DNA of 64,000 nt from the sequence record MK308675.1; one strand, 5' to 3'. Shown in pieces: positions 17,896 to 59,583 of this stretch (position 1 is the stretch's first letter; every line of letters starts with the position of its first letter). A program made the position numbers and the translations under genes. The notes beneath the pieces were generated by a model. That model saw only the letters and a program-made list of their open reading frames with translations, was not told where the DNA came from and did no database searches.

Positions 17896-17897
17896 AT

Positions 17898-17917
17898 GGA
17901 GGCTTCGGCCTCCTTTT
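17898..17917 (+). terminator. intrinsic terminator hairpin
   Basis: GGAGGC-TTCG-GCCTCC-TTTT. Confidence 0.75.
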
Positions 17918-17932
17918 ATTTAGGAGTTAACA

Positions 17933-40610: not shown

Positions 40611-40620
40611 GGTGATTTAA

Positions 40621-41547: not shown

Positions 41548-41552
41548 TAAAG

Positions 41553-43115: not shown

Positions 43116-43125
43116 GGAGTAAGGA

Positions 43126-46100
43126 ATGAATCCCGAAGCCAAGCAAGTTGGCCATTTAGAGAGCGACGTTAAAGGTCGCTCTTTTGACCGATACAAAATA
43201 AAAGGCTCTCTGTCTTTAAACCCGCCTTTGGGCGGAGTGCAACCGCCTTTTCTAGCATATACGCAAAAGGATGGAAACCGCCAAATAGGCACTGTCTCAC
43301 TTTGGATACGTCGAAGAGGTGTGGCAAACAAGTCCCCCTCTACAACGGACGAGACTATATTTAGCCATCAGGCGTCATCGACTACGGCCTCTTACGGCGG
43401 AATGGGATTCGATTCCAGCGGCCATCTAGCCCACTTCATGTCTGACGGCACCGCTACGCAGTACGGCATGATAACGAAAGAGCGCTTTGTAGACTGTTCT
43501 CGCTTCTACCATATTGTGGTTCACTGGAATACATGGATATCGGATGCTAACCAACGCATGCGCATGTTCGTTGACGGCAAGGAAATCAAATCGTTCATTC
43601 ACTTTACCATGCCGCCGCTCGGCTACCAGGGGAAAGTGCATAATGCGGCTTATCCGTTTACCATCGGTCACGTTCCGGGACTGTCTGCTTATAATTACTT
43701 CGCTTTAAATGCCGAGATTGCAGACTTTGCCCTAGTTGATGGCCAGGCACTATTCCCGAAAGACTTTGGGCACTTTGATACCCAAGATAACTGGCGTCCA
43801 AGCTTCCCGAGCTTCGAAGGATGGGGACCTAACTCTCTGTTTTTGACCTGGGATAAACAGGCTAACGGAATGACCTCGCATGTCATTAATCGCCCTTCGC
43901 AATATGCCCCGGATGAGACCGACGATAAGAAGCCTATCTCTACGGTGCCTACGCCAGGTATTAAAGCCGACATCACCATACACAAGTCGTACAACCACAC
44001 GTCAAACCAACATATGTTCTTGCAGGACTCAGTCCGCGGAGACGGCTGGTTCACTACGTTCTCAGAAGCTACGATTAACTCGCGCTACCATGGTCGACCT
44101 GCGCCGGCACCCAATGGGGAAGATGAACACTTAAGGTTCAGCGGCTCCTTTAACTGGGAGAAACGTACGGATAATGAGCCGACATATTGGACACACTTCC
44201 TCTTTGCTACGGGACCCGAACACGGCATCAGTATCGTTCCTCACGATGGTACCGCCGCAGAAAAGAGAATTGAGCACGGTCTGGGGCGTAAGCCGGACTT
44301 AGCCATAAACGTGGTCCAGGAATCCGGAGCAAGCTACCCGATGTATACTTGGGCCAAAGGCTTTACGGATACTAACGACGATTCTCGCCTAAATCTCCAT
44401 AATGGCTCAGGGGTCTTTACAGCACCTGGAGCAGACCACTGGCGAAACTCCTTAACGGACGAAACCTATTTCGGATTCGGTAGTGGGAGCGCGAACAACA
44501 GCGCATCTGGTAGAAACTTCATCACGTATTTCTTTGCGTCCGTTCCCGGAAAGTCCCAGTACTTTAAATGGGAACATCGCGGGTCTAACACTAGGACGCG
44601 TTTTGAATGCGGTTTCCGCCCGCGCTTCTTCTTCTGGAAGACGGCAACGCCGTCGGGTGAGACTGCCGATGTCGGTGCTTGGGTGGTTGTTGACTGTCGA
44701 GACGGTACGGCTTGGGAATTCGACCGCACGCGCGGCGGATACTACTCTTACAGTGCGACTTACTTCAATCCGGCTGAGGTAGACGATACCGGTTTCTCAA
44801 TGGGCCACGACCTGGCCAGCATAGACGGCATTATCATGGCCTTCGCGGACGAGTCGGACCTAAACCGCTGTGCCAAGTCAATAATGAACGATAACCGTGT
44901 TCGGCCGATTAACTTCCATGGCACGGCGGACATCAGTGACGCAACTCCAGATAACCCAGGTGTAATCCTTAGCTGGAATAATGCTAACCGCTGGGCATCC
45001 GCAAACGGAGCAGCTCACCAGAGCCAGAGAGCCACGGAAGGCGGTTATCGCCTAGAGCTTTCACATACGCGTACCAATACCGCGGTAGGCTTAGGGCTTT
45101 CTCGCTCATTGCCGGAAAGCGGTAAGTGGTACTTTGAGGTAGATAGTTGCTATACGTTCGTTTTATGCGGCTACCAATTCATGGACGGTGCCCAGAACGG
45201 ATACGACTACTACGACTACGTCAAAGATACGCCGGGGTACGTATATGCTGGCGGCGTAAAGAACACACGCAGAAGTCACTACATTGCCTTGGATATGGAT
45301 GCGCGGACATTACATGTCACTACCTCCGACGGCAAGGTGTTCACTCTACCGGTTCCAGACGCCGACGAACGCACTACGGGCGATTATCAGTTCTTCGTAT
45401 CCTCTAACGTCGCGTCTAAAGATACGGCCTCCATCAACTTAGGGCAGCGCCCTTTTGTAAATGAGATGCCAGTGGGCTACCGTCCTCTGAACGACCTCGG
45501 CAACTATCAGGAAAACTCGATTGAGCCTGAGAAATACTTCGACAACTTCATTTACAATGGCCTGCAAGCTTGCCATCAGGACATGTCGTCTACGTGGGCT
45601 TACTGGGGCGTGAAGTCTTTTGAAATCGACGGCGAACTTTACCTAGCCCGCCGCCGCACGCACAGGATAGCGAACCCGCCGGTTGCCGCGGACTGGGTTA
45701 ACCAAGGACATGTGGAAATATGGCTCTGGAACAGACATACTAAGAAGTTCAACGAACATCATACCTTGGCCATGCCTTCGGGCGGATACGCAATAGATGT
45801 GAAGTCGATAGATGGAGAGACGTATCTTTCTGCGGGGTCACACTACAACGGCTCACACGACATCACTGGCGGAGCATACCTCTTTAGATGGAACCGGACA
45901 CACAAGAGATTCGAAACATTAGTTCGCCGCAATGAAGGTACCGGGCACATAGGAACCGAGATTTTCGACATCGATGAAGACCATTTGGGCTGGATAATGT
46001 CATCTCACCGCAACGGTACTGTCTTTGACTTGGATTCTCACTTCTTTAAAGTGGAGAAACAAACAGGCAATGTTGTAAAGGTCCAGGCTATCCATACGGC

Positions 46101-48831
46101 CGGGGCACACGGCGTATCGACTGAGGTCTTTGAGGGAGAAACGTGGGTCACTATTTCGGAGTATCGTACTGGCGCAAATGGAGCTCAACTTGGAAACATT
46201 CCGCAAAGAAGTTGGCGCTATGACCCGACCACCAGCGAGTTAGTGGCCGCCCCAGGTCTAACTACTGGACAGTATGCCGCAGTGGTACAGAATAAACTAT
46301 TCGCGCACTCGGGTAACTTATATTGCCTGGTTTCATCTCGTCATACGGCCAACGTTTGGACGGAGTATACTAGCCTGGGCATGTTTAAGCTAAATGCCGC
46401 TAAAGACGGCTGGGACCAAATCACCTCTATGGGCTCAATTGGCGCCAGCGAAGTAAGCGTACTGAAGAAAGATGACGGAGTTTACATCAGTGTCCCTTGT
46501 TATTACAACGGCACGTCAGTAGCATCCCGTCAGAACTACGTAGCGTTTAGCACGATTGCTTTCTTTAACCCGCAAACAGAGACGTTGATTTCCCACGAGA
46601 CGTGGCGTGGTGTGGCTCAGACAGGTGCCGACTTCTTTGAGGACGATGGTGACTTCTATTTGGCCACGACGTCTACTTTGGACGATAGCTACAGCGCGAC
46701 ATGGATGGGCGTGCAAAAGTTTGCCGATAAGAACTTATCTGGATTCATTACTCGGGCCCAGTTCGGCAGTGACTCAGTCTACGACTCTGTGCGCATTGAT
46801 GACGCCGACGGAGAGTACGTCCTGATGGTAGAACACGTGAAAGAATCTTCTCGCAGTCAAAGATTGTCAGACATTCAAATTCACGAGTACAACCCGACCA
46901 CAAAGAGTATATCGCGCATAGGCACGCGCTCATCTCACGGCTGTCATGCCTTGGACGCTAAGAAGATTGGCGGCAAGTGGTACCTCGCGTCGGTCAATCA
47001 TTCAAACGCCAGTACCGACACTACCGGCGGCGCCATTAACATTTATGTCTGGAATGAAACTACCAAAGACTTAGACTTCGTCATATCGTCACCCGTACAC
47101 GGCTGTATAGAGGCGAAGTGGTTCGAGTCCGACGGTAAGACATATGTTTCCATTACGTCTAATCGCAGCGGTTCGAACTATGGACAGCCACTGGGTACGT
47201 TCTTGTTCGACCCAGCGTCTGTAGGTAGCGAGCTCACAGTCAAACCGACTTTGTCGGGCTCAGGCCATTTCGGTCTAGACCTTTATGAGTTCAAAGGAGA
47301 AACCTTCGGCTTTATCGGCGGTTCAGCCGCGTCTTCTTCTGGCGGCTATCATACGGCCTTTATAAAGTGGTATCCTGACTCGGAGACTTGGGGCGTTCAT
47401 CAAAACCAAATCGCAGGTTCCAATATTCCGCATGGTTACGGTCGCTTCTTTGAAGCGAATGGACGACTGTATCTTCTTCTGGGCGCAGACCGCATCGGAG
47501 GCACACCAAACGCAACAACGGTTTGCCAGCTTTACCGTTACAGCGAAGCGACGCAGAGGATGTATTTCGTCAATGAGGTTCATGCTCCCGGAGCACGAAA
47601 CTTCAATGTCGTTGAATACGAGGGCGACATCTATGCGGCCATGGCTACGTGGGGTACGCCCGAGAGTAACAATCGCGGACTGGACCCGTATGACTGGACG
47701 GACAACCTCCTGCTTAAGTTTGATGCAGCAGACGAGACGTTCTACCTAGAAGCGGTTTATCCAGCGCACCATTCGGTTTGTCATAAGTTACACCTGATGA
47801 ACGACGGTAATCTGTTCATAGCGGCGCATAGCCACACGACGAACAATACCTTTAGTGCTCCTAACTTATGGCTACAAGTTAAGAAAGGTGCAGCGGCGAT
47901 GCAGCACAACACCTTGACGGTCCCGACCGACTTTGTCTGGCTCAAGTCGCTTTCTGGCCCTGCTAACTCACATAAGCAGTTCGCTAAGAAGGTAGGTTGG
48001 GAAAGGCAACTAACGTCCGACACGGCAGACGCGGCAAGCTTTACTAACGGCCAGCATATTTTCGGTGTCTACAAACACGGAGTTCGTTTAGCGTATTCGT
48101 CATCAGCAAACGTCGCGCGCCTAGCTTACTCGGTGTATGCCTGGAAAGCTGCCCCAGAGGCGGGCTTTGATTGTACAGTCCACGAAGGTAGTGGCGGCAC
48201 ACAGCATGCCCTCCCTTACGATATGGGCGACAAGCAAGCCACGCTCGGCATCATTAAGAGCATCGATGTTTCCGGCAACTGGATGGTTCAAGGACCTATC
48301 TTGAAATCTGTAAACAACCGAGTGCTTTACTTAAATGGTACCGGGGCCGCACAAGACAACTCATCCGACGGCTACATGTCTATGTTCTACAACGTAGGCC
48401 ACTACGTTCTCGGGAACCAGGATGTGTCTAACGACCACGTAAACCGCAATGGGCAGAAATACATGGGCCTATGGTTCCGTAGTATAGAAGGCCAGGTTAA
48501 AGTGGGTCGCTATTCGGGCACGGGCCAAGTCGATGGCGATTTCGTTCCGCTGTCATTTAGCGCCCGCTGGATAATGATAAAGAGTGAAGCGAGTTCCAAC
48601 AACTGGGCGGTCTATGACTTGAACAACGGAGCTAACGTTCGAAACGACGTGACGCACATCATCTATCCTAATCTCTCGCAGAGTATGGGAGAGCCGGTAA
48701 CGGATAAGATAGAAGTAAGTGCCGGCGGTTTCCGCCCTATCGGTGCCGGTAACATCCATAACCAAAACGGACAGCCTTATGTCTTCATCGCCATAGCGGA
48801 CGACCCGTTTGGTACATCTAACGCTTACTAA
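43126..48831 (+). CDS. large tail fibre / receptor-binding protein: LamG, beta-rich repeat, SPRY, 14 EAR/EPTP-like repeats, beta-rich repeat
   Basis: LamG TVSLWIRR...YHIVVHW..RMFVDG..IADFALVDG; SPRY SGKWYFEV; 14 repeats of about 55 aa at about 45580-47890; C-terminus YVFIAIADDPF. Confidence 0.75.
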   Translation: MNPEAKQVGHLESDVKGRSFDRYKIKGSLSLNPPLGGVQPPFLAYTQKDGNRQIGTVSLWIRRRGVANKSPSTTDETIFSHQASSTTASYGGMGFDSSGHLAHFMSDGTATQYGMITKERFVDCSRFYHIVVHWNTWISDANQRMRMFVDGKEIKSFIHFTMPPLGYQGKVHNAAYPFTIGHVPGLSAYNYFALNAEIADFALVDGQALFPKDFGHFDTQDNWRPSFPSFEGWGPNSLFLTWDKQANGMTSHVINRPSQYAPDETDDKKPISTVPTPGIKADITIHKSYNHTSNQHMFLQDSVRGDGWFTTFSEATINSRYHGRPAPAPNGEDEHLRFSGSFNWEKRTDNEPTYWTHFLFATGPEHGISIVPHDGTAAEKRIEHGLGRKPDLAINVVQESGASYPMYTWAKGFTDTNDDSRLNLHNGSGVFTAPGADHWRNSLTDETYFGFGSGSANNSASGRNFITYFFASVPGKSQYFKWEHRGSNTRTRFECGFRPRFFFWKTATPSGETADVGAWVVVDCRDGTAWEFDRTRGGYYSYSATYFNPAEVDDTGFSMGHDLASIDGIIMAFADESDLNRCAKSIMNDNRVRPINFHGTADISDATPDNPGVILSWNNANRWASANGAAHQSQRATEGGYRLELSHTRTNTAVGLGLSRSLPESGKWYFEVDSCYTFVLCGYQFMDGAQNGYDYYDYVKDTPGYVYAGGVKNTRRSHYIALDMDARTLHVTTSDGKVFTLPVPDADERTTGDYQFFVSSNVASKDTASINLGQRPFVNEMPVGYRPLNDLGNYQENSIEPEKYFDNFIYNGLQACHQDMSSTWAYWGVKSFEIDGELYLARRRTHRIANPPVAADWVNQGHVEIWLWNRHTKKFNEHHTLAMPSGGYAIDVKSIDGETYLSAGSHYNGSHDITGGAYLFRWNRTHKRFETLVRRNEGTGHIGTEIFDIDEDHLGWIMSSHRNGTVFDLDSHFFKVEKQTGNVVKVQAIHTAGAHGVSTEVFEGETWVTISEYRTGANGAQLGNIPQRSWRYDPTTSELVAAPGLTTGQYAAVVQNKLFAHSGNLYCLVSSRHTANVWTEYTSLGMFKLNAAKDGWDQITSMGSIGASEVSVLKKDDGVYISVPCYYNGTSVASRQNYVAFSTIAFFNPQTETLISHETWRGVAQTGADFFEDDGDFYLATTSTLDDSYSATWMGVQKFADKNLSGFITRAQFGSDSVYDSVRIDDADGEYVLMVEHVKESSRSQRLSDIQIHEYNPTTKSISRIGTRSSHGCHALDAKKIGGKWYLASVNHSNASTDTTGGAINIYVWNETTKDLDFVISSPVHGCIEAKWFESDGKTYVSITSNRSGSNYGQPLGTFLFDPASVGSELTVKPTLSGSGHFGLDLYEFKGETFGFIGGSAASSSGGYHTAFIKWYPDSETWGVHQNQIAGSNIPHGYGRFFEANGRLYLLLGADRIGGTPNATTVCQLYRYSEATQRMYFVNEVHAPGARNFNVVEYEGDIYAAMATWGTPESNNRGLDPYDWTDNLLLKFDAADETFYLEAVYPAHHSVCHKLHLMNDGNLFIAAHSHTTNNTFSAPNLWLQVKKGAAAMQHNTLTVPTDFVWLKSLSGPANSHKQFAKKVGWERQLTSDTADAASFTNGQHIFGVYKHGVRLAYSSSANVARLAYSVYAWKAAPEAGFDCTVHEGSGGTQHALPYDMGDKQATLGIIKSIDVSGNWMVQGPILKSVNNRVLYLNGTGAAQDNSSDGYMSMFYNVGHYVLGNQDVSNDHVNRNGQKYMGLWFRSIEGQVKVGRYSGTGQVDGDFVPLSFSARWIMIKSEASSNNWAVYDLNNGANVRNDVTHIIYPNLSQSMGEPVTDKIEVSAGGFRPIGAGNIHNQNGQPYVFIAIADDPFGTSNAY

Positions 48832-48841
48832 GGAGTAAGAA

Positions 48842-49261
48842 ATGCGTTCATTTTCTAAGAAATTTGGACGCGGCCCTGCCTCTCAAATCAGTAAAGGCAC
48901 CAAGAGCGCGGGTTTCCGCGCCGATGGTGCGCTCCTGGTCACAGGCAGTGTCGTAAACACCCCTATCACTTTGCCCTATGCTGCAAACGTGGAGCTATCC
49001 TTAGCAGATAGCGATACGCAGCATCTAGAACTAGCTGGCGATGTGCATATTACTGCGCCGGAGCTAAGAGTAGGTGGGTCCTGGAAAATCTATATAAGGC
49101 AAGATGCGACAGGCGGACACGATGTAACCTTCGGGGCTAACCTAAAGAACATCTATGGTACACCGGTGTTGTCTGCCGCAAACGCGACGACGTTAATGAC
49201 CCTAATCGGTCGAGGGGATGGTAATTTTGATTACACCCTAACGGCCGTTGCCACGATTTAA
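48842..49261 (+). CDS. small tail fibre anchor/adaptor protein
   Basis: GGSWKIYIRQDATGGHDVTF motif seen in phage fibre N-terminal domains. Confidence 0.6.
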   Translation: MRSFSKKFGRGPASQISKGTKSAGFRADGALLVTGSVVNTPITLPYAANVELSLADSDTQHLELAGDVHITAPELRVGGSWKIYIRQDATGGHDVTFGANLKNIYGTPVLSAANATTLMTLIGRGDGNFDYTLTAVATI

Positions 49262-49281
49262 ACTAAACAAACGAGGTTAAC

Positions 49282-52200
49282 ATGCTTCTACCAAACATTG
49301 ACGGTGGGGTTGTTAGTAAAGCAAGGGGCGATATCAATGTCGCCCCTCCTCTTTACGACCCGGAAGGCTCAATATTCCTAGATGGCCGCGACGGCGAAGG
49401 CGGCATGTTACAGTTCCGCCCGGAAACTCCATCGGACTCTACGAAATGGTGTTATTCTATCTGGATAAAGAATGGTGGGTTCAGCTACAGTGACCGGCAC
49501 TTCACGCTGCTTGGCGCTGTAAACCAGAACGGTATTCCGTCGGCACTTAACACTTCTCGGCTTGACGACAACATGGCATATATAGCCATCGACGATTCGA
49601 GCACCTTTAAGTTAAGTAATATTACGAATAACGCAACTATTGACACCTACACTCTCCCGATTAAATTTAAAGACTCGGCCGACTGGCAGCATTTGTTTGT
49701 TCGTTTTGACACCACTCGCGACATACTAGAACTGTTCGTCAATGGGGTTTTCGCAGGCGATGTCGTCGTGGCTAAAGATATCTTGAGGTTCGGCGATACT
49801 TCCCACTATCACTACATCGGAGCAGATTCGTATTCTCGTACTCGAGATGCCTATTTTACAGACCCAGCACTTATCTTCGGGGAGGGGCAGCTGGATGTTA
49901 ATGATTTTGGTTACACTGACGAACACGGCGTGTGGCGTCCGAAGGACCTAACGCAATCTTTACCGAAAAGTATTTGGAAAGGGAGCTCTTTTTACCTACA
50001 GCCGGGTAAAACGCCTAGGTTTACCGAAGAGGCCGAAGGCGGCATCGCGCATGGTCACAAATATCAACGTGGTTTCCAGAGATTCAGAGTCGGCTTTGAG
50101 CCAGACATGGTTATGGTTTTCTCTACCAAGTATGGTTTTGCCGAAGGCGCCGACTTTACCTTTAAAGAGTTGCCAGAACTCTCCATCAATGCATCAAACG
50201 AAGTGGGTGCCGTCGCGGACCCAAATGGGGTAAAATATTTCCACGATGGTTTTTCCATGGGAACTTCCGGGAACTTCCATAACGAGAACGGTTTCCCTTA
50301 CTCTTACTTGGCCTTTAAGAAAGGAGCTAAGTACGGCATCGACATCATTCATTATACGGGTGACGGCCAAGACAATCGCCGGGTCGCCCACGAGCTGGAA
50401 CAGCGCCCGCTTTCTACTTGGATTATTCCAGTCGACGTCAACGCCAACCGAACATATAACCATATCGAGTTAGGACCCAATCGCGTCATGACCCTTGAGG
50501 ATGGCGAGCTAACCGCAAGCACGGGCTACATACGTAACCTGACGGACAAAGAAGTTGTGGTCAGCAACTCAGCGAACGTCAATGCCAGCGGCGTACGCTA
50601 CGCAATGATTTGTTTTGGTAATAAACAGGGCGTTATGTCCGTGGAACATCTTGTTGGTCCCGGCAATAGTCTACATTCTGGGTCCACTGAGACGCCGATT
50701 GATTTCCACGGGCTGGTTGCATTTACTCGCCGGATGGCAGGTAGCGGTAATCGCGCACTAGACATTATTACCAACGACTCCGTGCGTTCTATTTCGAGCG
50801 CGTACGCGGTGGCCTATCCGAACAACAGTGCCAATAACCCCCAGTTCTTCAGCAGCAATCAGTTAAACTGGTTAACGACCGTCGCCGAAACAATCGGCTA
50901 TGCCGCTAGGGCAGATACGCGGTCAATCTTTAAGGCATGTAAGTCTGTAGTCAACGACGTTCAGTTAATCCCTCGTCGTATGTCGACGCATGATGCTTTG
51001 TCCGACGATAGTCCTTTCAGGAACTTAGGCGTCTGGAAAAACGCAGAGACGAATAGCACTTCGAGCTTCCACAGCGGCGGGCTTGGGGCGCACCTAGGCA
51101 ATGGCGCGACGGCACAGGCCAAATGGAGCAAGTCGATACGCGGACGCTGTTACTGGGAAGTCAACGTCGAGTCCTCAGGCAGCGGCTACTACTATTTGGT
51201 CGGCTTAACGGGCAACCCGGGCTACACTTCGGCTGCTTACATCGACTGGTCGTACTATGTCGTTTATTACGCTAATAATGGAACAATACTCAGTTCTCCT
51301 CCAGGCACTGGCGGTGAGCAATTAGGGACGACAACCGGCGGCGGTCATAGACATATTTACAGTATGTTGTGGGACCCGGAAATACGTACGCTTAAAATGT
51401 ATCGTGACGGAAGCCTTCTTTTCGAACAAGACATGAGTGCTTATGATTTACCGGACTCGATATATCCGTACATACGCCACGCCTCGGGAGCACAATCCAC
51501 AGTCTTCGCGATGAACGACGGGCGCTTCCCGTTTTTGTATCCTGAGCTTGCCGATAATGCACCTTCTCTTATGGAGGATGGCCTTAAGCCAATCGCGGAC
51601 ATAAAGAACAGCCAGGTAGCTTTTAAGCCGGTTGCGTACAAAGCGGGCGATAACTCGGGCCATCTGTTCTCTTATACTGGACAGCCGGCATCCACGACAT
51701 GTAACATGTTCGAGGCAGACGGTAAACTGTATCTCTATAAGGCCAACTTCGGTGATGGTTCGACGCACCACGTCAACGATGAGCTAATTCGCATTAATGA
51801 GGACGGCTCTTTCGAAGTAGTGCTGGAAGGGCAGTACGGCAGCGCCACCTATGACACTCGCCATTTCGAGTCCAACGGCAGACATTTCCTCATTGTCTGC
51901 GACTACAATAAGGGGGCCTGGGGGAGCGCTAACACAGGTATCGGCATAATCACTTACGAGTTTCATCCTAAGACAGAAACGCTAACGACTATCTCGGTTT
52001 TACCTAACGGTGGCGTGAACAGGCTATCGCTTTACGAGTTTAACGGTGAACTGTTCTTAGCTCGTTGTGTGTGGGGCACCTCGTATGAAAACATCCGCAT
52101 TTACAAATGGCAGCCGGACCACTTAACCTGGAAGGAAGGAGGCTACGAGGCTCTTACAAATGCCACCGCGGCACAGTTCTGGGAACGTGACGGAACACTC

Positions 52201-53649
52201 TATCTGTCTTGTGCTGCTTTGATGACGGCGGGCCGTAAGAGTGCGACGTATCGAGTCGACCCGGAAACAGGGAACCTTGCTCTCGTGTTCGCAGGGCCTA
52301 ACGTAAACCAAGCGCGCTCTTTGGCAGTCAATACGGCTAAAGACGGTAACACCTACATGTTGATGTCATACACGGGAACGAGCAACAAGCTCTTCAAGTG
52401 GGACCCTGTTAACGAGGACTGGATTGAGGATGTCGCGCCTGGGTCCTGGGCAAACTGCTACGGAATGAGCACCTTCAAAGAAGGAGAAGAGGTTTACTTC
52501 GCAATGGCGAATGCGGAATATACTTCCTCAAACGTACTGCATCACTTTGACCCGGTTACGAAGGGGCTGACTCCTATCGTTACGGCGGCTTCACAAAACG
52601 CACACGATGCTCAAAGCATTAAGTATCGCGGCGTGTGGTATACGGCATTCGCGAACCACCGCACGTCGAGCAGCTATGCCCAAGGCTACATCACTGTGGT
52701 GACCTCTAAAGTTGACCCCGACACAGGAATATTGAAAGCAGGTCGCTTCATTGAGATGCCTAAGGGCGCTGACTTAATGTGGGTTAAGGACAGAACCACA
52801 CCGGGCATTGCTCATCGTTTGTACAGTCCTAAGATGGTAGATAAGGAACTCTATCCGGGCCTAAACCTACCTGCTGGAAATTCGGCCACCGTAGACTGGC
52901 ACGATGACGGCGTGTTGTTACAAGGCGGTTATACCGGACACAATACCGGCAACATTAACCACGTGGCATACTTCTGGAAAACTGGCCCTGAGTACGGCAT
53001 TGATTTCTCTTTGCAAACCTCGGGGCCGGATGGAACAACCGCGGTGACACACGAACACAATTGCGGCGACATCCCGGAAGTTTTGATGATAAAAGGACTA
53101 ACGAATAACTCATCGTGGCATGTCAGGTTTGAGGATTTTGCGGATACCGATACCTTGCTCTTGGACACGAACACCGTAAGGTATACGTTGCCTGGCGCTA
53201 AGTATTGGGATAAGGCAAACTTCAATGAGAAGTCCGTATCGCTGTTCGCAGCGAATGCAATTGGTGTCAACCAAGGATTCGCAATGTTGGCTATTCGTTC
53301 CGTCCCGGGCTATTCAAAAACCGGTTTTTATTGGGGCAATGGCAACGCGTCGGGTATCGATTTTAACCTTGGATTTAAACCAGCATGGATGTTGGTCAAG
53401 ATTGAAAACGTCGTCGGTAACGATTGGGTAATCTTCGATTCGTCGCGTTCACCGTTTAACAAGGACGGGATGGCGAGATTGCGAGTTAACGGTACTCAGG
53501 TTGAGGACGCAGCGGAAAATAACGACATCTTCTTTACGTCAACTGGCTTTAAGTGTGACGGTACGGGAAGTTCCATGAACCGACTGAATGCTAAGTACAC
53601 ATTCATCGCGTTTGCGGAAAACCCGTTCGAACACACCAACGCTCGATAA
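49282..53649 (+). CDS. large tail fibre / receptor-binding protein: LamG, beta-rich repeat, SPRY, 7 EAR/EPTP-like repeats, beta-rich repeat
   Basis: LamG CYSIWIK..WQHLFVRFD..LFVNG; SPRY GRCYWEV..LWDPEIRTLKMYRDG; 7 repeats at about 51670-52700; C-terminus YTFIAFAENPF. Confidence 0.75.
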   Translation: MLLPNIDGGVVSKARGDINVAPPLYDPEGSIFLDGRDGEGGMLQFRPETPSDSTKWCYSIWIKNGGFSYSDRHFTLLGAVNQNGIPSALNTSRLDDNMAYIAIDDSSTFKLSNITNNATIDTYTLPIKFKDSADWQHLFVRFDTTRDILELFVNGVFAGDVVVAKDILRFGDTSHYHYIGADSYSRTRDAYFTDPALIFGEGQLDVNDFGYTDEHGVWRPKDLTQSLPKSIWKGSSFYLQPGKTPRFTEEAEGGIAHGHKYQRGFQRFRVGFEPDMVMVFSTKYGFAEGADFTFKELPELSINASNEVGAVADPNGVKYFHDGFSMGTSGNFHNENGFPYSYLAFKKGAKYGIDIIHYTGDGQDNRRVAHELEQRPLSTWIIPVDVNANRTYNHIELGPNRVMTLEDGELTASTGYIRNLTDKEVVVSNSANVNASGVRYAMICFGNKQGVMSVEHLVGPGNSLHSGSTETPIDFHGLVAFTRRMAGSGNRALDIITNDSVRSISSAYAVAYPNNSANNPQFFSSNQLNWLTTVAETIGYAARADTRSIFKACKSVVNDVQLIPRRMSTHDALSDDSPFRNLGVWKNAETNSTSSFHSGGLGAHLGNGATAQAKWSKSIRGRCYWEVNVESSGSGYYYLVGLTGNPGYTSAAYIDWSYYVVYYANNGTILSSPPGTGGEQLGTTTGGGHRHIYSMLWDPEIRTLKMYRDGSLLFEQDMSAYDLPDSIYPYIRHASGAQSTVFAMNDGRFPFLYPELADNAPSLMEDGLKPIADIKNSQVAFKPVAYKAGDNSGHLFSYTGQPASTTCNMFEADGKLYLYKANFGDGSTHHVNDELIRINEDGSFEVVLEGQYGSATYDTRHFESNGRHFLIVCDYNKGAWGSANTGIGIITYEFHPKTETLTTISVLPNGGVNRLSLYEFNGELFLARCVWGTSYENIRIYKWQPDHLTWKEGGYEALTNATAAQFWERDGTLYLSCAALMTAGRKSATYRVDPETGNLALVFAGPNVNQARSLAVNTAKDGNTYMLMSYTGTSNKLFKWDPVNEDWIEDVAPGSWANCYGMSTFKEGEEVYFAMANAEYTSSNVLHHFDPVTKGLTPIVTAASQNAHDAQSIKYRGVWYTAFANHRTSSSYAQGYITVVTSKVDPDTGILKAGRFIEMPKGADLMWVKDRTTPGIAHRLYSPKMVDKELYPGLNLPAGNSATVDWHDDGVLLQGGYTGHNTGNINHVAYFWKTGPEYGIDFSLQTSGPDGTTAVTHEHNCGDIPEVLMIKGLTNNSSWHVRFEDFADTDTLLLDTNTVRYTLPGAKYWDKANFNEKSVSLFAANAIGVNQGFAMLAIRSVPGYSKTGFYWGNGNASGIDFNLGFKPAWMLVKIENVVGNDWVIFDSSRSPFNKDGMARLRVNGTQVEDAAENNDIFFTSTGFKCDGTGSSMNRLNAKYTFIAFAENPFEHTNAR

Positions 53650-53661
53650 GTAAAAAGAATA

Positions 53662-53689
53662 CCTCCCTAGTCTCTCGGGACTAGGGAGG
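53662..53689 (+). terminator. intrinsic terminator closing the fibre cassette
   Basis: CCTCCCTAGTC-TCTCGG-GACTAGGGAGG then TCTTTATTTTT. Confidence 0.8.
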
Positions 53690-53754
53690 GTCTTTATTTT
53701 TTAACAAATCAAATAGTGCTATACACTTATTTCTTCTGGCCGGAGAACTATTAA

Positions 53755-54744
53755 ATGTCAATCCAAACGCTATACAAATACCAGTTCGACAAGTACGGAA
53801 ATAACTCCGCTAACTTGATTCCAAATGAACCGGTGAAGTTCGATACTCCGCGTATCGTTCCTTTCGTACTGAGAGAAGGTAACTTCTATCAGAAAGACTT
53901 AACTATCCGAGATAAAGCAGACAACAGTTTATTGGTCTTAGGTACCGACTATAACCTAGTTGGCCTAGATGCTGACCTTACAGCAGAGACAGGCTTAACT
54001 GTAGCAGGCGGTATCGAGTTAGCCGATAAAACATTCATCGGTGAATTGGAAGTTACCTATCGCTGCGTAGGTGGACCGCAAGGCGAATCGCGCGCTCTTT
54101 ATCTGGAACTAATCGAAGCAATCACAAACGCAGGAACTAACCCTAGTGTTCTTTGGGAATCCATCATTGGTCGCCCTCAGCGCTTCCCGCCTGAAATCCA
54201 CTCACACTTACTGAGCGAACTGACTGAACTTGAGAAACTCTATCAGTCAATGCAGGACATGACTAATGCAATCGTCAACTCTAAGCCGATGTATGGTTCC
54301 AACCAAAACATCTTAGAACAGATTGAAGGCATCATTCAAATCCAGGCAGCGATGCAGTTAGCACTTAACCGTGTGGCTACAGGCGTAGGCTCAGTCGCGT
54401 TAATTAACCAAGTGCGTGATAATCTCGCTAACGTTCATAAGCAGTTCGATAAGACGACCAACACCGTTGGCGTTACTTGGGCAGACGTAGCAGTTATCCC
54501 TGAAGCGGACTTCAACAACGCACGCGGCGTCATCTCTATTGTTGATGCAACCGACTCCATGCAGATGGATTTCGATATTTCGTGGACTACCGCGAAAGAC
54601 CCGTCTTACACACACTATGGCCATATCGGCACAGATGAACTCATCAACGCGATGCAAGTCATTAAACAGTCAGGTAACGTTGTAGTTCAAATTCGAACCA
54701 CTAAAGACGCAACCGTCAAGACTAAATTTACTCACCTGCTTTAA
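53755..54744 (+). CDS. baseplate/tail-fibre attachment protein, paralog 3
   Basis: N-terminus YQFDKYGNNSANLIPNE...GNFY; WESIIGRPQRFPPEIHSH motif. Confidence 0.7.
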   Translation: MSIQTLYKYQFDKYGNNSANLIPNEPVKFDTPRIVPFVLREGNFYQKDLTIRDKADNSLLVLGTDYNLVGLDADLTAETGLTVAGGIELADKTFIGELEVTYRCVGGPQGESRALYLELIEAITNAGTNPSVLWESIIGRPQRFPPEIHSHLLSELTELEKLYQSMQDMTNAIVNSKPMYGSNQNILEQIEGIIQIQAAMQLALNRVATGVGSVALINQVRDNLANVHKQFDKTTNTVGVTWADVAVIPEADFNNARGVISIVDATDSMQMDFDISWTTAKDPSYTHYGHIGTDELINAMQVIKQSGNVVVQIRTTKDATVKTKFTHLL

Positions 54745-54753
54745 GGAGCACCC

Positions 54754-55200
54754 ATGAAGATTACTTTTCATTTCTTCGATAACCGCGCAATCGGTTCGCT
54801 ACTTATCAAAGCACGCCTTTCCGAGCATTTCTCTCATGTGGGAATGGAGTTTGAGAACGGCGCGTTTATTCACAGCACTATGCTGCACGGCACCGTCATG
54901 CAGAAACTTAGCGACCAGCCAACTGAGCCTCTTGCGTCGGTAACTATCGATGTAGACGAAGAAGCGTACATGGAAGCGTACGAATGGGCAGTTCATCAAG
55001 TGGGTGGCAAATACGACTACAAGGGAATCATTGGTTTCATGTTCGCTAAGAAATGGAACGATGAGAATGCGTTCTTCTGTTCTGAGCTAGGACGTAAAGT
55101 ATTTGAAATCGCGACAGGGAAAATCCTGAAGTATTATAATTTGGTTACGCCCGGCGAATTACGCATGCTTGTAGCTATGCACAATCTAGACGGCAAGTAA
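54754..55200 (+). CDS. permuted papain-like amidase (YaeF/YiiX-type permuted NlpC/P60)
   Basis: SHVG (His) before G.KYD and FCSEL (Cys) motifs in permuted order. Confidence 0.8.
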   Translation: MKITFHFFDNRAIGSLLIKARLSEHFSHVGMEFENGAFIHSTMLHGTVMQKLSDQPTEPLASVTIDVDEEAYMEAYEWAVHQVGGKYDYKGIIGFMFAKKWNDENAFFCSELGRKVFEIATGKILKYYNLVTPGELRMLVAMHNLDGK

Positions 55201-55216
55201 CTTAAGGGAAAAGACT

Positions 55217-58200
55217 ATGAGTAGCAAATTAATCTTTACCATGCAATATTTCCGCGGGGAGAAAAAGCGCGAATATCTCGCTGACCCTGAAACCGGACTT
55301 ATTCCTGGTACTGGTGAAACGGGCGGAGGTCTAGAAGAATACGACCGCGCCAAAGCATGGGATAAAGACGACGTCGTTATTCGCGACGGCGCTATCTTCC
55401 AAGCGAACGAAGACATTCCTGCGGGCTCTTCTTTCATTGAAGGCCTTACTGGCCCGACTTGGCTTAAGTTAGGCGCAGAAGCGGTAGCGACACTTCCCGA
55501 CTACGCTGTAGGCATTCGTTATCTTAAAGACCAAGCGATTGCCCGTGGTCGAGTTATCTACCGTGCGAAGAATGACTTTACTTCTGCCGCGTGGAATCCA
55601 GCACAATGGGAAACGGTCTTCTCTGAAGACGCAGTTCGCGATAAGGTAGCGGACTTCAGTACTGCACAGTCTTACGTAACGCATGAATTAGTTGCCTACA
55701 ACGGTGACATCTATGCGGCAAACGAAGATATGGCGGCAGGGGCCTTTGACGCATCTAAATGGCAGAATCTAACTACGCCTAACGTAACATACGTCGATGA
55801 CTATGCCCCGGGCACAGTCTATACCAAAGACGCTGTAGTTATGCGCAATGGTCAATTGTTCCGTGCAACGCAACAAACTGCGACAGCATGGGATGAAGGC
55901 GATTGGCAAGCGGTTTCTTCAGTTTCTACTGTTCGTGGTTACTGGGACCTTAATGCAACCTATAAAGCAAACGAAATAGTTATCGCTAATGACCGCTTCT
56001 ATCGTGCTAACGGCGATATCGGTTCAGGCACTACGTTCACTGTAGGTACTGGTACTGAAGAATGGACTGAGGTGTCGGGCCCTGTTACTCCGCCTATCAC
56101 GGCAGATGACTTTAAAGCTTCTACGCTTTATGCTAAGAATCAGGTTATTGTAGTTAACGGCATCCTTTATCGGGCTAAGGCAGAGTTCACTTCACTCTCT
56201 GCATTTAGCATCGCGGATTGGGACCCTGTCTCTTATGACCCAGAAACGGCCGTAGACGCATGGCAAGCTAATACTGACTATAAAGCAGGGCAGTTAGCCA
56301 CGTTAGTTGTAAATGGTCGTAACACGCTTTACAGAGCGCGTGCGGACATCACAGGCGGAGCGAGTTTCGTAGCGGCCGAATGGGACGACCTAACTCAAAC
56401 GTCGACCTGGCGTGCTGAGTGGGATATCTCGAACATCTATGCTAAGGACGACGTTGTGTGGCGTGCAGGGCATCTGTACATTGCCAACGATGCGGTACCT
56501 ATCAACACTGCATGGGTAGAAGGCATCACCGGCGCTACGTGGGCTCGTTTGTTGGCCGAACCAGTATCTAAGATTTCTGTTTGGGCAGCAACAACTTCTT
56601 ATCAGAAAGATGAACTTCTAGCTTATGATGGCAACATCTATCGCGTGGAAGCCCCTTTCGTTTCTGGCGCGGCATTTACAAGCGGTGGCCTAGAACTGCT
56701 CACTGCCGGTAAGTATACTAAGATTCCTGCATTCCGTGGCTCTAACGCTTACGTCCAAGACGAGACGATTGCCGAAGGCGGAATCCTTTACCGCGCTAAA
56801 GCGGACTTTACGTCAGCTACAAACTTCAATGAAGCAGACTGGGAAGTTATCGCGGACATCGCGACAAACATCCTGTACGACTTCAGTATCACAGAAGACT
56901 ATGTAGAAAATGAAATCGTTTTCCACTTAGACTCCATCTGGCGTGCTAAAGGCGACCTTGCTCCTGGGGCTTGGGACGAGTCCGATTGGGAATTCGTTTC
57001 TGAATACTCAACCTTTAAAGGTCAGCACGTCCAGGCACGTGACTACAAGCAAGACGACGTGGTAATCCACAACAACCGATTATATCGAGCAAACTCGAAT
57101 ATTGCGGGCGGCACTGCTTTCTTGGCAGGTAGCGGAGGTAACCAATGGACTGAGGTTTCCCCTCCAGGAAATCCTTCTGCTCCGGACTGGGCAAGCTCAA
57201 CGGCATATGTTCAGCACAACTTGGTCATTCACGGTGGCGTCCTTTACCGCTGTAAGACAGACCATACTTCAGGAAGTAGCTTCCTCGCTTCTCAGTGGGA
57301 GACATTGAAAGCAGAAGCGGCTACCTTGGCTTCGACTTACCAGAATGGCCAAGAATATGTCCTTGACCAACTGATTGAATACAACGGCATTCTTTACCGC
57401 TGTATCGAAGCGATGCTAAGTTCACCTGTAACGTTCGAGCCAGACAAATGGCAAGGCGTATCGGTTTCTTATATCCGCATCTCTGCGCATAGTGCTTCAG
57501 CCGTTTATCGTGAAGGCGAATTGATTTGGCACGTGAATCGCTTGTATCGTGCTAAGGCAGGCATTAACCCAGGTCGTGCTTTCTCGCTTAACGATTGGGC
57601 TATCTCTGAAGATACCAACTACGTGAGCGAATATGCGGAGAATGAAGACTACCGCCTAGGCCAACTTATCCGTTCAGGTGTTGACTTATATATCGCAAAC
57701 GAAGCTATTACCGGTGCTCCTGCTGTACTTGACGAAACTAAGTGGAACCGCGTAGGTTACCGCCCAACCGTTCAAGGCGCGCATGACGATACTCTTGCGT
57801 ATAAGCAAGGGGACATTGTTCTTAAGGAAGGTACTTGGTACGAAGCTAACGCGGACATCGCGGCTAACGTGGCCCTGTCTGAAGGTACTACTGGCGCCAC
57901 ATGGAAACGTGTAACCGACAGCATGACCATCAAGGCACATGCGGCAGACGCAATCTTCTTCCCTGGTCAGCTCTGTCTACATGAAGAGCGCGTTTACACA
58001 GCGAAGGAATTCCTAACGGTAGACAGCTCTAATACGTTCCAGTCTATCAAGTGGGAGAAGCTAGGTTCGTTTGTTACTCTAGCGGAAGACTACCAAGACA
58101 ACATCGAATACAAGAAAGACCAAATCATCTTCCATCTGAGCGTTCTTTACCGCCGCATTGCGACGGGCACCGATACGACTTGGACGGCAGCAAATTGGCA

Positions 58201-59551
58201 AGCTCTTTCTTTAACCGCGGCGATTCTAAACGACTTCGACAACACGAAGAACTATGCTGCCAACGAGGTCATCACTCGCGGAGGTGCTACCTACCGTGTT
58301 AAGACTCCTGGCATTAAAGCTAGCTTCGTAGAAAGCGATTGGGACCGCATCGATGAGCGTCCTACGTTCCGTGGCGAATGGGCTCAGGCTAATGCTTATA
58401 AAGCAGCTGACTTCGTAGTTCGCGACAGTATCCTTTACACTGCCAACGATGATGTTCCGGCAACAACTGCATTCTCAGTCGGCACTACCGGCGCTACATG
58501 GAAACGTCAGTCGCCAGAGAACATTGCAGTTGAGCACGTAGGTGCTGAGATTACGGTAACTGAGGGACAACCTGTTCTTCATCGCCGTGTTCTTTACTTC
58601 GCAACACAGACGGTAACCATTCCTGATGCGTTCGATGAAACCGGACTTAAGAAGATTGGTCGCTTCGGCATGACCGAGCAAACCTTCGAAGCCGATACTT
58701 GGTTCCCTGCTGGTTGGTTAATGCGTCAAGACGATAAAGTCTACAAAGCGAAAACGGACTTTACCACTGCGACGGCCTTTGATGTTGCTGACTGGGATTT
58801 AGTTTCTCATGACTACGCGTTCATTGTAGAGTTCAGCACAGCTGACACTTACTACAAAGACCAAATCGTTATCAACTCTAAACTACTTTACCGTGCTAAT
58901 ACAGACGTTACTGTAGCGGGTGCTTGGGACTCTGCCCAATGGGACCAATTGGCTCCAGCTGAAGCAGCTCGTATCGAGACTCATGACGAGACTAACGAAT
59001 ACCTACTTGACGACATTGTCTTCAAAGACGGTATGTTGTGGCGTGCTAACTCTGCCATCGCAGCGAACACTCCGTTCGTTAAGGGCACGAGTGCCAACGA
59101 ATGGCGTGCAGCCATTGAACTTAAGATTAAAGCGTTTGCTGAAGGTGAGAACATTCTTACCGGAGAGTACCGCTTAATCGAAGGTCACTTAGCCGTAGCA
59201 AAAGAAGACATTGCATCTACTGCTGCGTACGCTACGGAAACTGAGAAGTGGAGTATTCTGTCTCACGACATCTCCAAACTTAAGATGGTTTACCCAGTCC
59301 GCGAATACTTACCGGCCGAGACAAACATCAACTATGATGGTTCAATCGACGGTTCAGTATCCGACACTTGGGTAGTCACGGGTAGCTTACCGACTACAGA
59401 ACTTTCAGTGTTACTATGGTTAGGTTACGAGTTCCACTTAGGTGGCCTAGACGTAACTGACAAAGTAGTACAGAAGGGTTCGTCAGCACCGTATGGTTTC
59501 GGCATTAGCGGTGTCTGGATTGAGTCAGGCGACGTCCTAGAGGTACGATAA
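55217..59551 (+). CDS. 1444-aa protein with about 26 tandem CBM5/12-like carbohydrate-binding modules
   Basis: Repeat consensus W/Y/F-x5-Y-x4-V-x2-NG-x-LY-x-A...W; repeat 7 AWQANTDYKAGQL..LYRA closely matches Bacillus ChiA1 chitin-binding domain AWQVNTAYTAGQLVTYNGKTYKC. Confidence 0.8.
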   Translation: MSSKLIFTMQYFRGEKKREYLADPETGLIPGTGETGGGLEEYDRAKAWDKDDVVIRDGAIFQANEDIPAGSSFIEGLTGPTWLKLGAEAVATLPDYAVGIRYLKDQAIARGRVIYRAKNDFTSAAWNPAQWETVFSEDAVRDKVADFSTAQSYVTHELVAYNGDIYAANEDMAAGAFDASKWQNLTTPNVTYVDDYAPGTVYTKDAVVMRNGQLFRATQQTATAWDEGDWQAVSSVSTVRGYWDLNATYKANEIVIANDRFYRANGDIGSGTTFTVGTGTEEWTEVSGPVTPPITADDFKASTLYAKNQVIVVNGILYRAKAEFTSLSAFSIADWDPVSYDPETAVDAWQANTDYKAGQLATLVVNGRNTLYRARADITGGASFVAAEWDDLTQTSTWRAEWDISNIYAKDDVVWRAGHLYIANDAVPINTAWVEGITGATWARLLAEPVSKISVWAATTSYQKDELLAYDGNIYRVEAPFVSGAAFTSGGLELLTAGKYTKIPAFRGSNAYVQDETIAEGGILYRAKADFTSATNFNEADWEVIADIATNILYDFSITEDYVENEIVFHLDSIWRAKGDLAPGAWDESDWEFVSEYSTFKGQHVQARDYKQDDVVIHNNRLYRANSNIAGGTAFLAGSGGNQWTEVSPPGNPSAPDWASSTAYVQHNLVIHGGVLYRCKTDHTSGSSFLASQWETLKAEAATLASTYQNGQEYVLDQLIEYNGILYRCIEAMLSSPVTFEPDKWQGVSVSYIRISAHSASAVYREGELIWHVNRLYRAKAGINPGRAFSLNDWAISEDTNYVSEYAENEDYRLGQLIRSGVDLYIANEAITGAPAVLDETKWNRVGYRPTVQGAHDDTLAYKQGDIVLKEGTWYEANADIAANVALSEGTTGATWKRVTDSMTIKAHAADAIFFPGQLCLHEERVYTAKEFLTVDSSNTFQSIKWEKLGSFVTLAEDYQDNIEYKKDQIIFHLSVLYRRIATGTDTTWTAANWQALSLTAAILNDFDNTKNYAANEVITRGGATYRVKTPGIKASFVESDWDRIDERPTFRGEWAQANAYKAADFVVRDSILYTANDDVPATTAFSVGTTGATWKRQSPENIAVEHVGAEITVTEGQPVLHRRVLYFATQTVTIPDAFDETGLKKIGRFGMTEQTFEADTWFPAGWLMRQDDKVYKAKTDFTTATAFDVADWDLVSHDYAFIVEFSTADTYYKDQIVINSKLLYRANTDVTVAGAWDSAQWDQLAPAEAARIETHDETNEYLLDDIVFKDGMLWRANSAIAANTPFVKGTSANEWRAAIELKIKAFAEGENILTGEYRLIEGHLAVAKEDIASTAAYATETEKWSILSHDISKLKMVYPVREYLPAETNINYDGSIDGSVSDTWVVTGSLPTTELSVLLWLGYEFHLGGLDVTDKVVQKGSSAPYGFGISGVWIESGDVLEVR

Positions 59552-59555
59552 AGTC

Positions 59556-59583
59556 ATAGAGGAGGGCTTCGGCCCTCCTCTAT
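59556..59583 (+). terminator. intrinsic terminator
   Basis: ATAGAGGAGGGC-TTCG-GCCCTCCTCTAT. Confidence 0.8.

What the first reader, a model, noticed from the sequence alone, without database searches (positions are those of the whole stretch)
55330..59270. Protein made almost entirely of about 26 tandem CBM12-like chitin-binding modules
Seen: 26 consecutive about 50-aa repeats with no catalytic domain; repeats 7 and 13 (AWQANTDYKAGQL..., DWASSTAY...LYRCKTDHTS) mirror the Bacillus circulans ChiA1 chitin-binding domain. Established: CBM5/12 usually occur in 1-3 copies on chitinases; Vibrionaceae colonise chitin. Inference: a high-avidity virion tether to chitin or mucus that parks the phage where hosts gather, a chitin analogue of Ig-domain adherence to mucus.
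Basis: partly seen in the sequence, partly recalled or inferred. Interest (0 to 1): 0.75.

Follow-up and report, generated by a model that had tools for sequence, protein, structure and literature searches.

The report
Tail fibre built from CBM12 modules
A jumbo Vibrio phage encodes a 1444-residue protein made of 26 small chitin-binding-type modules in a row; it sits in the tail-fibre gene cluster and is most likely a long fibre used to reach the host, and nothing yet shows that it binds chitin.

Summary
ORF 55217-59551 (+) encodes 1444 aa: a 38-aa N-terminal peptide, 26 tandem modules of 45-52 aa (aa 39-1351, nt 55331-59269) and a 93-aa C-terminal domain. No catalytic domain was found. Pfam CBM_5_12 scores 118 bits (cut-off 26.2). 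An AlphaFold model of two modules (pLDDT 89) superposes on the B. circulans ChiA1 chitin-binding domain (1.9 A).

The window is Vibrio phage vB_VmeM-Yong, a phiKZ-like jumbo phage; the gene is annotated "hypothetical".

The closest solved relatives are the N-terminal tail-binding modules of the Agrobacterium phage Milano and 7-7-1 tail fibres, not chitinases. T4 gp34 and an F2-pyocin fibre carry the module too.

The gene lies in the tail-fibre cluster. It shares a terminator-bounded three-gene unit with a phiKZ gp131-like fibre-anchor paralogue. Homologues with 13-31 modules sit in the tail modules of unrelated phages.

Best reading: a long virion tail fibre with a shaft of CBM12-like modules. 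Glycan binding is possible, and chitin binding specifically is untested. The conserved aromatic at the ChiA1 W687 position is also present in the Agrobacterium phage fibres, so it does not argue for chitin. This is a new variant of a known kind.

The parts
53662..53689 (+). Terminator-like hairpin (12-bp stem) closing the upstream 1455-aa fibre gene. It marks the 5' boundary of the three-gene unit.
53755..54744 (+). 329-aa protein whose N-terminal 145-175 aa form the phiKZ gp131-like fibre-anchor domain. It is the first gene of the unit and the candidate adaptor that fixes the repeat fibre to the baseplate.
   Evidence: phrog_2163/13857. tblastn hits in 173 jumbo-phage records, including PhiPA3 gp150. 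In the phiKZ atlas paper PMC13250141, gp131-like N-termini anchor the fibres. PDB 9d93 'tail collar fibers gp4', E=3.6e-6. 34% identical orthologue at the same position in L003.
54754..55200 (+). 148-aa conserved small protein and second gene of the unit. It has faint similarity to permuted papain-like (YiiX/YaeF, NlpC/P60) enzymes. Its role is unknown; a fibre assembly or maturation factor, or a lytic accessory, is possible.
   Evidence: phrog_1128 E=1.5e-14. NCBIfam YiiX E=0.034 and Pfam NLPC_P60 E=0.13, both below cut-off. 41% identical orthologue directly upstream of the repeat gene in L003.
55217..59551 (+). The repeat-protein gene, 1444 aa (GenBank QAX96166.1, 'hypothetical protein').
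55217..55330 (+). N-terminal 38 aa: a conserved peptide followed by a Gly-rich hinge (GTGETGGG). Proposed attachment end.
   Evidence: The same kind of N-terminus is seen in orthologues P0023, P0025 and BONAISHI ORF141. Its role as an attachment end is an inference.
55331..59269 (+). 26 tandem CBM12-like modules (aa 39-1351). The long sub-type units are repeats 1, 5, 8, 12, 17, 21 and 25.
59270..59548 (+). C-terminal 93-aa beta-rich domain with no recognisable fold. Proposed distal tip.
   Evidence: Found only in a few orthologues (mainly Vibrio jumbo-phage fibre proteins) among 1.84 billion representatives. AF2 pLDDT 75. No significant Foldseek match for this part. No Pfam hit.
59556..59583 (+). 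Terminator-like hairpin (12-bp stem) 5 nt after the stop codon. It marks the 3' boundary of the unit.

Best explanation
The gene encodes a long virion fibre of the tail apparatus of the phiKZ-like jumbo phage vB_VmeM-Yong. The short conserved N-terminal peptide would fix it to the baseplate fibre complex, probably through the gp131-like 329-aa protein encoded two genes upstream in the same unit. The 26 CBM12-like beta-modules form the extended shaft; at roughly 2.5-3.5 nm per module this gives several tens of nanometres (my estimate). The shaft is probably a homotrimer, as in the Milano and 7-7-1 fibres that carry the same module. The 93-aa C-terminal domain would be the distal tip. The fibre serves first contact with the host cell. 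The modules may add weak multivalent binding to a surface glycan. Shown: module identity, number, fold, gene neighbourhood and homologues in tail modules. Inferred: virion location, attachment mode, oligomeric state and ligand.
For: PHROG 9851 'tail fiber protein', E=3e-43. The best PDB matches of both the whole protein and the repeat profile are the Milano gp124 and 7-7-1 tail fibres, where residues 27-125 lie in the N-terminal tail-binding module of a trimer. T4 gp34 residues 46-91 and an F2-pyocin fibre also match. All upstream neighbours from 39612 to 54744 hit tail-fibre or virion-structural PHROGs. The 329-aa neighbour carries the phiKZ gp131-like fibre-anchor domain. The three genes are spaced 9 and 16 nt apart between two strong terminator-like hairpins, and the same triplet is conserved in L003. 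In L004/L005, a homologue with 19 modules sits between a Phage-tail_3 protein and a DGR-diversified protein. In L007, two giant CBM_5_12 proteins precede a Peptidase_S74 protein. In L006, the homologue lies beside Gp10_C and a tape-measure protein. The sm033 homologue is annotated as a tail fiber. GC content matches the neighbourhood. Only core positions are conserved among the repeats. Orthologues differ in module number, 16-17 against 26, as expected for a shaft of adjustable length.
Against: No virion proteomics or imaging exists for this phage or its relatives. The BONAISHI paper reports no mass spectrometry and lists ORF141 as hypothetical. The protein itself lacks the gp131-like N-terminal domain. 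In BONAISHI and sm033 no homologue of the 329-aa or 148-aa proteins lies within the fetched flanks. The trimeric state could not be modelled. In Milano and T4 the module occurs in only 1-2 copies at the attachment end, so a whole shaft made of it has no solved precedent.
Confidence: 0.7

Rival explanations
1. One reading: the 26 modules are working chitin-binding (or mucin-binding) domains. They would tether the virion with high avidity to chitin particles or mucus where vibrios gather. This would be a sit-and-wait strategy independent of host recognition.
For: True CBM12-like sequence and fold, closest among cellular proteins to the ChiA1 chitin-binding domain and the tandem CBM12 of Vibrio chitin oligosaccharide deacetylases. 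An aromatic residue (17 Phe, 6 Trp, 1 Tyr of 26) sits at the column aligned with ChiA1 W687, which from my own knowledge is the pivotal chitin-contacting Trp. The host is a Vibrio. Twenty-six copies would give avidity.
Against: The same aromatic is conserved in the Milano and 7-7-1 fibre modules of soil Agrobacterium phages. It is mostly Phe rather than Trp or Tyr. The other surface positions are not conserved among the repeats. Homologous multi-module proteins occur in phages with Gram-positive-type lysis genes (XkdX, Amidase_2). The gene is placed in the tail-fibre cluster. No published chitin binding by a phage CBM5/12 protein was found.
Confidence: 0.15
2. A fibre on the head or neck (a decoration or whisker) rather than on the baseplate. 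It would stabilise or shield the particle, or act as a sensor in the manner of T4 fibritin whiskers.
For: phiKZ-like phages have elaborate neck whiskers. Several neighbour PHROGs are labelled 'head and packaging / virion structural protein'. The protein lacks the gp131-like anchor domain.
Against: The immediate operon partner is a gp131-like fibre-anchor paralogue. The homologues in other phages are in tail modules. All solved relatives of the module are in tail fibres.
Confidence: 0.1
3. Not a virion protein: a soluble or released glycan-binding protein made during infection, for instance to coat the host or chitin surfaces.
For: No direct evidence of virion association exists.
Against: There is no signal peptide-like N-terminus (read directly). 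It is a tail-fibre PHROG member. It sits in a structural gene neighbourhood in every homologue examined.
Confidence: 0.05

Closest known systems
N-terminal tail-binding module of Agrobacterium phage Milano tail spike gp124 (PDB 8FQC) and phage 7-7-1 long tail fibre gp015 (PDB 9RKV)
   Same: Best sequence match (profile E 8e-18 and 2.5e-17; about 32% identity) and best structural match to a module pair. Same motif: Y..(D/G)..V...G.LY.A..D...G..F....W. Part of a trimeric baseplate-attached fibre.
   Different: Those proteins have two modules followed by a beta-helix and a jelly-roll tip. Here 26 modules make up 91% of the protein, there is no beta-helix, and the tip domain is unrelated. The papers do not describe the modules as CBMs.
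Chitin-binding domain of Bacillus circulans chitinase A1 (CBM12, PDB 1ED7) and CBM5 of Serratia ChiB / Streptomyces ChiC
   Same: Same fold (rmsd 1.9-2.2 A over 43-44 columns). Same core residues and an aromatic at the W687 column.
   Different: Those are single modules attached to a glycoside hydrolase with demonstrated chitin binding. Here there is no enzyme, there are 26 copies, the aromatic is mostly Phe, and the ligand is unknown.
Tandem CBM12 pair of Vibrio chitin oligosaccharide deacetylase (PDB 3WX7, 4NY2, 8YH4)
   Same: Two consecutive modules match a module pair of the phage protein (Foldseek E about 1e-5; phmmer E about 2e-3). Same bacterial genus as the phage's host.
   Different: 16-19% identity only. 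Appended to a CE4 catalytic domain.
phiKZ tail-fibre complex (gp131 and paralogues gp132-135)
   Same: Same phage lineage. The cluster here has three paralogues of the gp131-like N-terminal anchor domain and two giant proteins with propeller-type (EPTP) repeats, as gp131 has a propeller tip.
   Different: Homologues of the repeat protein in the annotated phage collection were found only in Vibrio, Aeromonas and Agrobacterium phages, with no Pseudomonas (phiKZ-type) record among them. The repeat protein lacks the gp131-like domain.
T4 Hoc and the 'bacteriophage adherence to mucus' model
   Different: Hoc has Ig-like domains, is monomeric and sits on the capsid. Here the fold is CBM12-like and the gene context is the tail fibre. 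No adherence data exist.

Membership tests
CBM5/12 superfamily (Pfam PF02839) | Sequence match to the family model above the curated threshold | tested here: met
   118 bits against a cut-off of 26.2, E=1.7e-34, 10 independent stretches
CBM5/12 superfamily (Pfam PF02839) | Small three-stranded beta fold of about 45 residues | tested here: met
   AF2 model of modules 13-14, pLDDT 89. Foldseek: 1ed7 rmsd 1.9 A, 2d49 2.1 A, ChiB 2.2 A. Module 26 superposes on CBM12 of Vibrio chitin deacetylase at 2.3-2.4 A.
CBM5/12 superfamily (Pfam PF02839) | Surface aromatic residue at the ligand-contacting position (ChiA1 W687) | tested here: inconclusive
   Aromatic in 24 of 26 modules, mostly Phe, and aligned with W687. 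It is equally conserved in the Agrobacterium phage fibre modules.
CBM5/12 superfamily (Pfam PF02839) | Binding to chitin or another insoluble polysaccharide | not testable with these tools
   Needs a pull-down with recombinant modules or virions
Phage tail fibre | Gene located in the tail or baseplate fibre module | tested here: met
   for the window; for homologues
Phage tail fibre | Homology to a protein seen as a fibre in a solved virion structure | tested here: met
   This holds at module level only: 8FQC gp124, 9RKV, T4 gp34 (9X3R), F2-pyocin fibre
Phage tail fibre | Presence in the virion, attached to the baseplate | not tested
   No proteomics or EM data were found for Yong, BONAISHI or pir03
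Phage tail fibre | Homotrimeric fibrous assembly | not testable with these tools
   Only monomer prediction was available
phiKZ gp131-like fibre proteins | gp131-like N-terminal anchor domain | tested here: not met
   The repeat protein has only a 38-aa N-terminus and hits no such PHROG. The domain is in the upstream 329-aa protein.
Hoc-type mucus-adherence decoration | Ig-like domains displayed on the capsid | tested here: not met
   No Ig-like Pfam hit. The fold is CBM12-like. The context is the tail, not the head.

The most novel reading that the evidence does not exclude
The 26 modules are functional chitin-binding (or other GlcNAc-polymer-binding) domains. The fibre would then park the jumbo phage on chitin particles or exoskeletons where vibrios settle. 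This would be the first virion-borne adhesin for an environmental substrate rather than for the host, and would extend the adherence-to-mucus idea to marine chitin.
Probability: 0.15. Interest if true: 0.75.

Novelty: new variant of a known kind. Interest (0 to 1): 0.45.

Why it matters
Tail fibres of phiKZ-like jumbo phages are poorly resolved, and the genes of this phage are all annotated as hypothetical. This finding assigns a fibre role to a 1444-aa protein. It defines a small family of fibres whose shaft is a string of 13-31 CBM12-like modules. It also shows that the module solved in the Milano, 7-7-1 and T4 gp34 fibres is a CBM5/12 domain, which the structure papers did not note.

The finding gives a cheap and direct test of whether phage virions can carry working chitin-binding modules: a chitin-bead pull-down of recombinant repeats or virions. 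A positive result would bear on phage ecology on marine particles and on phage use in aquaculture.

Tried and rejected
- **DNA-level tandem repeats:** Tandem Repeats Finder found none. The repeats are visible only at protein level.
- **Pseudo-alignment of shifted six-repeat windows for AlphaFold:** this failed because MAFFT aligned the overlapping identical parts (A2). I replaced it with non-overlapping module pairs from the window and three homologous loci (A3).
- **Relatives of the C-terminal domain:** The search for related loci found none in IMG/VR. The exhaustive HMMER search found only a few orthologues, mainly Vibrio jumbo-phage fibre proteins. Its AF2 model has no significant PDB match, so its fold and function stay unknown. 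The diphtheria toxin and C1q rows in that list have probability 0.05-0.15 and were disregarded.
- **Cassette conservation:** no homologue of the 329-aa or 148-aa proteins lies within the fetched flanks of BONAISHI or sm033. The cassette is shared only with L003.
- **Literature:** no report of chitin binding by phage CBM5/12 proteins. The 'CBM_5' in PMC8540738 means 'fifth CBM', not family 5. The BONAISHI paper has no virion proteomics.
- **Weak Pfam hits on the repeat protein:** Tmp39 and Kelch are below threshold and were rejected.
Full report
[quoted passage not shown] These are jumbo myophages of about 290 kb (278 kb for MS32) that infect Vibrio mediterranei. Window base 55217 corresponds to base 179217 of MK308674. 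The gene is QAX96166.1, 'hypothetical protein', and all but one of the 46 features in the surrounding 44 kb are likewise 'hypothetical protein'. Published comparisons place these phages beside BONAISHI and pir03 among phiKZ-related jumbo phages.

**The observation.** A single ORF, 55217-59551 on the + strand, encodes 1444 aa. A profile built from its own repeats finds 26 units between aa 39 and 1351. Twenty-five are clear and one is weak.

The check is not circular. The independent Pfam model CBM_5_12 scores 118 bits (cut-off 26.2, E=1.7e-34), with ten stretches significant on their own. Nothing else passes in Pfam or NCBIfam.

The repeats share 23% identity on average and leave no trace as DNA tandem repeats, so the array is old. 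The conserved columns are Y11, V/I 20-21, G25, L27-Y28-R29-A30, D33, A41, F/W43, W52 and L/V55.

Seven units (1, 5, 8, 12, 17, 21, 25) carry a four-residue G-T/S-x-G insertion before the last Trp. Their closest matches are nearly all other long units, at 35-49% identity apart from repeat 1's third-best match at 32%. They recur every 3-5 units, which gives the array a loose higher-order period.

**Fold.** I aligned module pair 13-14 (aa 654-752) with 28 other non-overlapping pairs from this protein and from homologues in L003, L004 and L006 (A3). AlphaFold2 gave mean pLDDT 89, with three strands and a short helical turn per module.

Foldseek against the PDB ranks the matches as follows:
- First, the tail fibres of Agrobacterium phage 7-7-1 (9RKV) and Milano (8FQC gp124).
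- Next, the tandem CBM12 of the Vibrio chitin de-N-acetylases.
- For single modules: ChiC CBM5 (2D49, 2.1 A), ChiA1 ChBD (1ED7, 1.9 A over 43 columns, 30% identity) and Serratia ChiB CBM5 (2.2 A).

The repeat profile searched against PDB sequences gives the same order:

| PDB entry | Protein | E-value |
|---|---|---|
| 8FQC | Milano gp124 | 8e-18 |
| 9RKV | 7-7-1 tail fibre | 2.5e-17 |
| 1ED7 | ChiA1 ChBD | 3.7e-7 |
| 3WX7 | Vibrio chitin oligosaccharide deacetylase | 3.4e-6 |
| 9X3R | T4 gp34, residues 46-91 | 2.4e-4 |
| 25VF | F2-pyocin tail fibre | 0.018 |

The modules are therefore true CBM12-like domains, and their nearest kin are modules already embedded in phage fibres. In the viral structure library, 57 predicted phage proteins match at E<=0.001. 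Many are auto-named 'ChiA1_BD' or 'chitin-binding type-3'.

**What the solved relatives do.** In Milano gp124, residues 1-175 are described as the N-terminal tail-binding module of a trimeric spike. In 7-7-1 gp015, residues 1-120 anchor the long fibre to the baseplate. The two CBM12-like modules occupy residues 27-125 of both proteins. Neither paper mentions carbohydrate or chitin binding. In these phages the module is a structural part of a fibre.

**Ends of the protein.** The first 38 aa form a short peptide followed by a Gly-rich hinge. Orthologues (P0023, P0025, BONAISHI ORF141) have the same kind of start.

The last 93 aa form a beta-rich domain. Among 1.84 billion representative proteins it occurs in only a few orthologues, mainly Vibrio jumbo-phage fibre proteins, at 33-49% identity. 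It has no Pfam match. Its AF2 model (pLDDT 75) has no significant structural neighbour. The orthologues have 16-17 modules against 26 here.

**Neighbourhood.** From 39612 to 59551 every gene on the + strand is fibre-like:
- Three paralogues share an N-terminal domain (phrog_2163/13857): 39612-40610, 40621-41547 and 53755-54744.
- Two giant paralogues carry DUF7483, and one of them has an EPTP propeller repeat: 43126-48831 and 49282-53649.
- Two proteins share a tail-fibre C-terminal segment: 41553-43115 and 48842-49261.

The shared N-terminal domain is found in 173 jumbo-phage records, including PhiPA3 gp150. The phiKZ structural atlas names PhiPA3 gp150 as the gp131 homologue. It shows that gp131-like N-termini of several paralogues form the bundle that anchors the fibres to the outer baseplate.

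The 329-aa paralogue, a 148-aa protein and the repeat gene are separated by 9 and 16 nt. They lie between two 12-bp-stem terminator-like hairpins at 53662-53689 and 59556-59583. The same triplet (326 aa, 156 aa, 2129-aa repeat protein) recurs in the metagenomic contig L003, at 34% and 41% identity for the two small proteins. GC content is uniform with the surroundings.

**Homologues elsewhere.** Only 20 proteins in the 5.8-billion-sequence collection match, all with PF02839. Counted with the window protein's repeat profile, the closer ones have 13-31 modules. Their contexts are all phage structural or tail modules:
- L004/L005: the 1519-aa homologue follows a Phage-tail_3 protein. It precedes a 665-aa protein whose C-terminus is the variable repeat of a diversity-generating retroelement. 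The VR is at 16454-16545, the TR at 16663-16754, all mismatches fall at TR adenines, and the reverse transcriptase is at 16888.
- L006: the homologue lies beside Gp10_C and a tape-measure protein.
- L007: two consecutive giant CBM_5_12 proteins lie downstream of a T4-type capsid gene (Gp23) and are followed by a Peptidase_S74 protein.
- Vibrio phage sm033: the 2351-aa homologue is annotated as a tail fiber.

**Interpretation.** The weight of evidence is for a long tail fibre whose shaft is a string of CBM12-like modules. The N-terminus would be the attachment end and the C-terminal domain the tip. The 329-aa gp131-like protein in the same unit is the obvious candidate adaptor.

Virion location, trimeric state, attachment and ligand are all inferences. 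No proteomics exist for this phage group, and only monomer modelling was possible.

**The chitin idea.** It cannot be dismissed, because the fold is that of chitin-binding modules and an aromatic sits at the column of ChiA1 W687 in 24 of 26 units. That W687 is the key chitin contact is from my own knowledge of the ChiA1 literature, not from a tool result.

Several points weigh against it:
- The same aromatic, also Phe, is conserved in the Agrobacterium phage fibres.
- No other putative surface position is conserved.
- Related multi-module fibres occur in phages with Gram-positive-type lysis genes.
- No publication in the library reports chitin binding by such a phage protein.

I put the chitin-tether reading at about 0.15. 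Weak multivalent binding to a host surface glycan along the shaft is compatible with the main explanation.

**Novelty.** The module and its presence in phage fibres are known, at least to automatic annotation and in solved structures. A fibre made almost wholly of 26 such modules, in a phiKZ-like phage, is not described. I rate it a new variant of a known kind, of moderate interest, with an easy experiment attached.

Noticed in passing
window 54754-55200 (+): 148-aa protein wedged between the gp131-like gene and the repeat gene. It has an FCSELG motif and faint, below-threshold similarity to YiiX/YaeF permuted papain-like and NlpC/P60 enzymes. It is conserved at the same position in L003 (41% identity). 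It could be a fibre maturation or assembly factor, or a tail-borne hydrolase.
   Followed up: partly
window 39612-40610, 40621-41547, 53755-54744 (+): Three paralogues share the phiKZ gp131-like N-terminal fibre-anchor domain but have different C-terminal halves. This suggests a hetero-oligomeric fibre base as in phiKZ, each paralogue perhaps docking a different fibre.
   Followed up: partly
window 43126-48831 and 49282-53649 (+): Two giant paralogous proteins (1901 and 1455 aa) end in DUF7483. The larger has an EPTP (propeller-type) repeat hit. They are probably the main receptor-binding proteins of this phage.
   Followed up: no
window 41553-43115 and 48842-49261 (+): The C-terminus of the 520-aa protein and the 139-aa protein both match the C-terminal end of phrog_4549 (tail fiber protein). 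The small protein looks like a detached copy of a fibre tip segment.
   Followed up: no
L004 16454-16545 (VR), 16663-16754 (TR), 16888-17973 (RVT_1): A diversity-generating retroelement lies next to the homologous multi-CBM fibre gene. The 92-nt TR/VR pair is 89% identical, with every mismatch at a TR adenine. The target is the C-terminus of the 665-aa protein just downstream of the CBM-repeat protein.
   Followed up: partly
L003 10001-16390: The closest homologue's gene has two in-frame TAG codons, at codons 2111 and 2120, near its 3' end. The database protein P0002 (2129 aa) was read through them. Either the gene caller used a TAG-recoded table for this contig, or the true protein ends at residue 2110.
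   Followed up: no
L007 10001-15595 and 15622-22953: Two consecutive giant proteins (1864 and 2443 aa), each starting with several CBM5/12-like modules, lie in a T4-like phage contig (Gp23 capsid). They are followed by a Peptidase_S74 (fibre intramolecular chaperone) protein.
   Followed up: no
outside the window (BFVD entries A0A6B7EV62, A0A6B7ERK0, A0A6B7EZN9, A0A6B7ERW8; BONAISHI A0A385A144, A0A385A1C8, A0A385A134, A0A385A154): Several further proteins, whose UniProt accession prefixes match those of the Yong and BONAISHI entries, match the CBM12-like module pair structurally. tblastn also reported a second matching place in each Yong genome. If they do belong to those phages, the module is used repeatedly in these phages.
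   Followed up: no
GenBank MK308677 (MS32) against MK308674-6: The MS32 isolate genome is about 12 kb shorter (278,116 against about 290,530 bp) although the fibre gene is identical. There is a deletion somewhere else in the genome.
   Followed up: no
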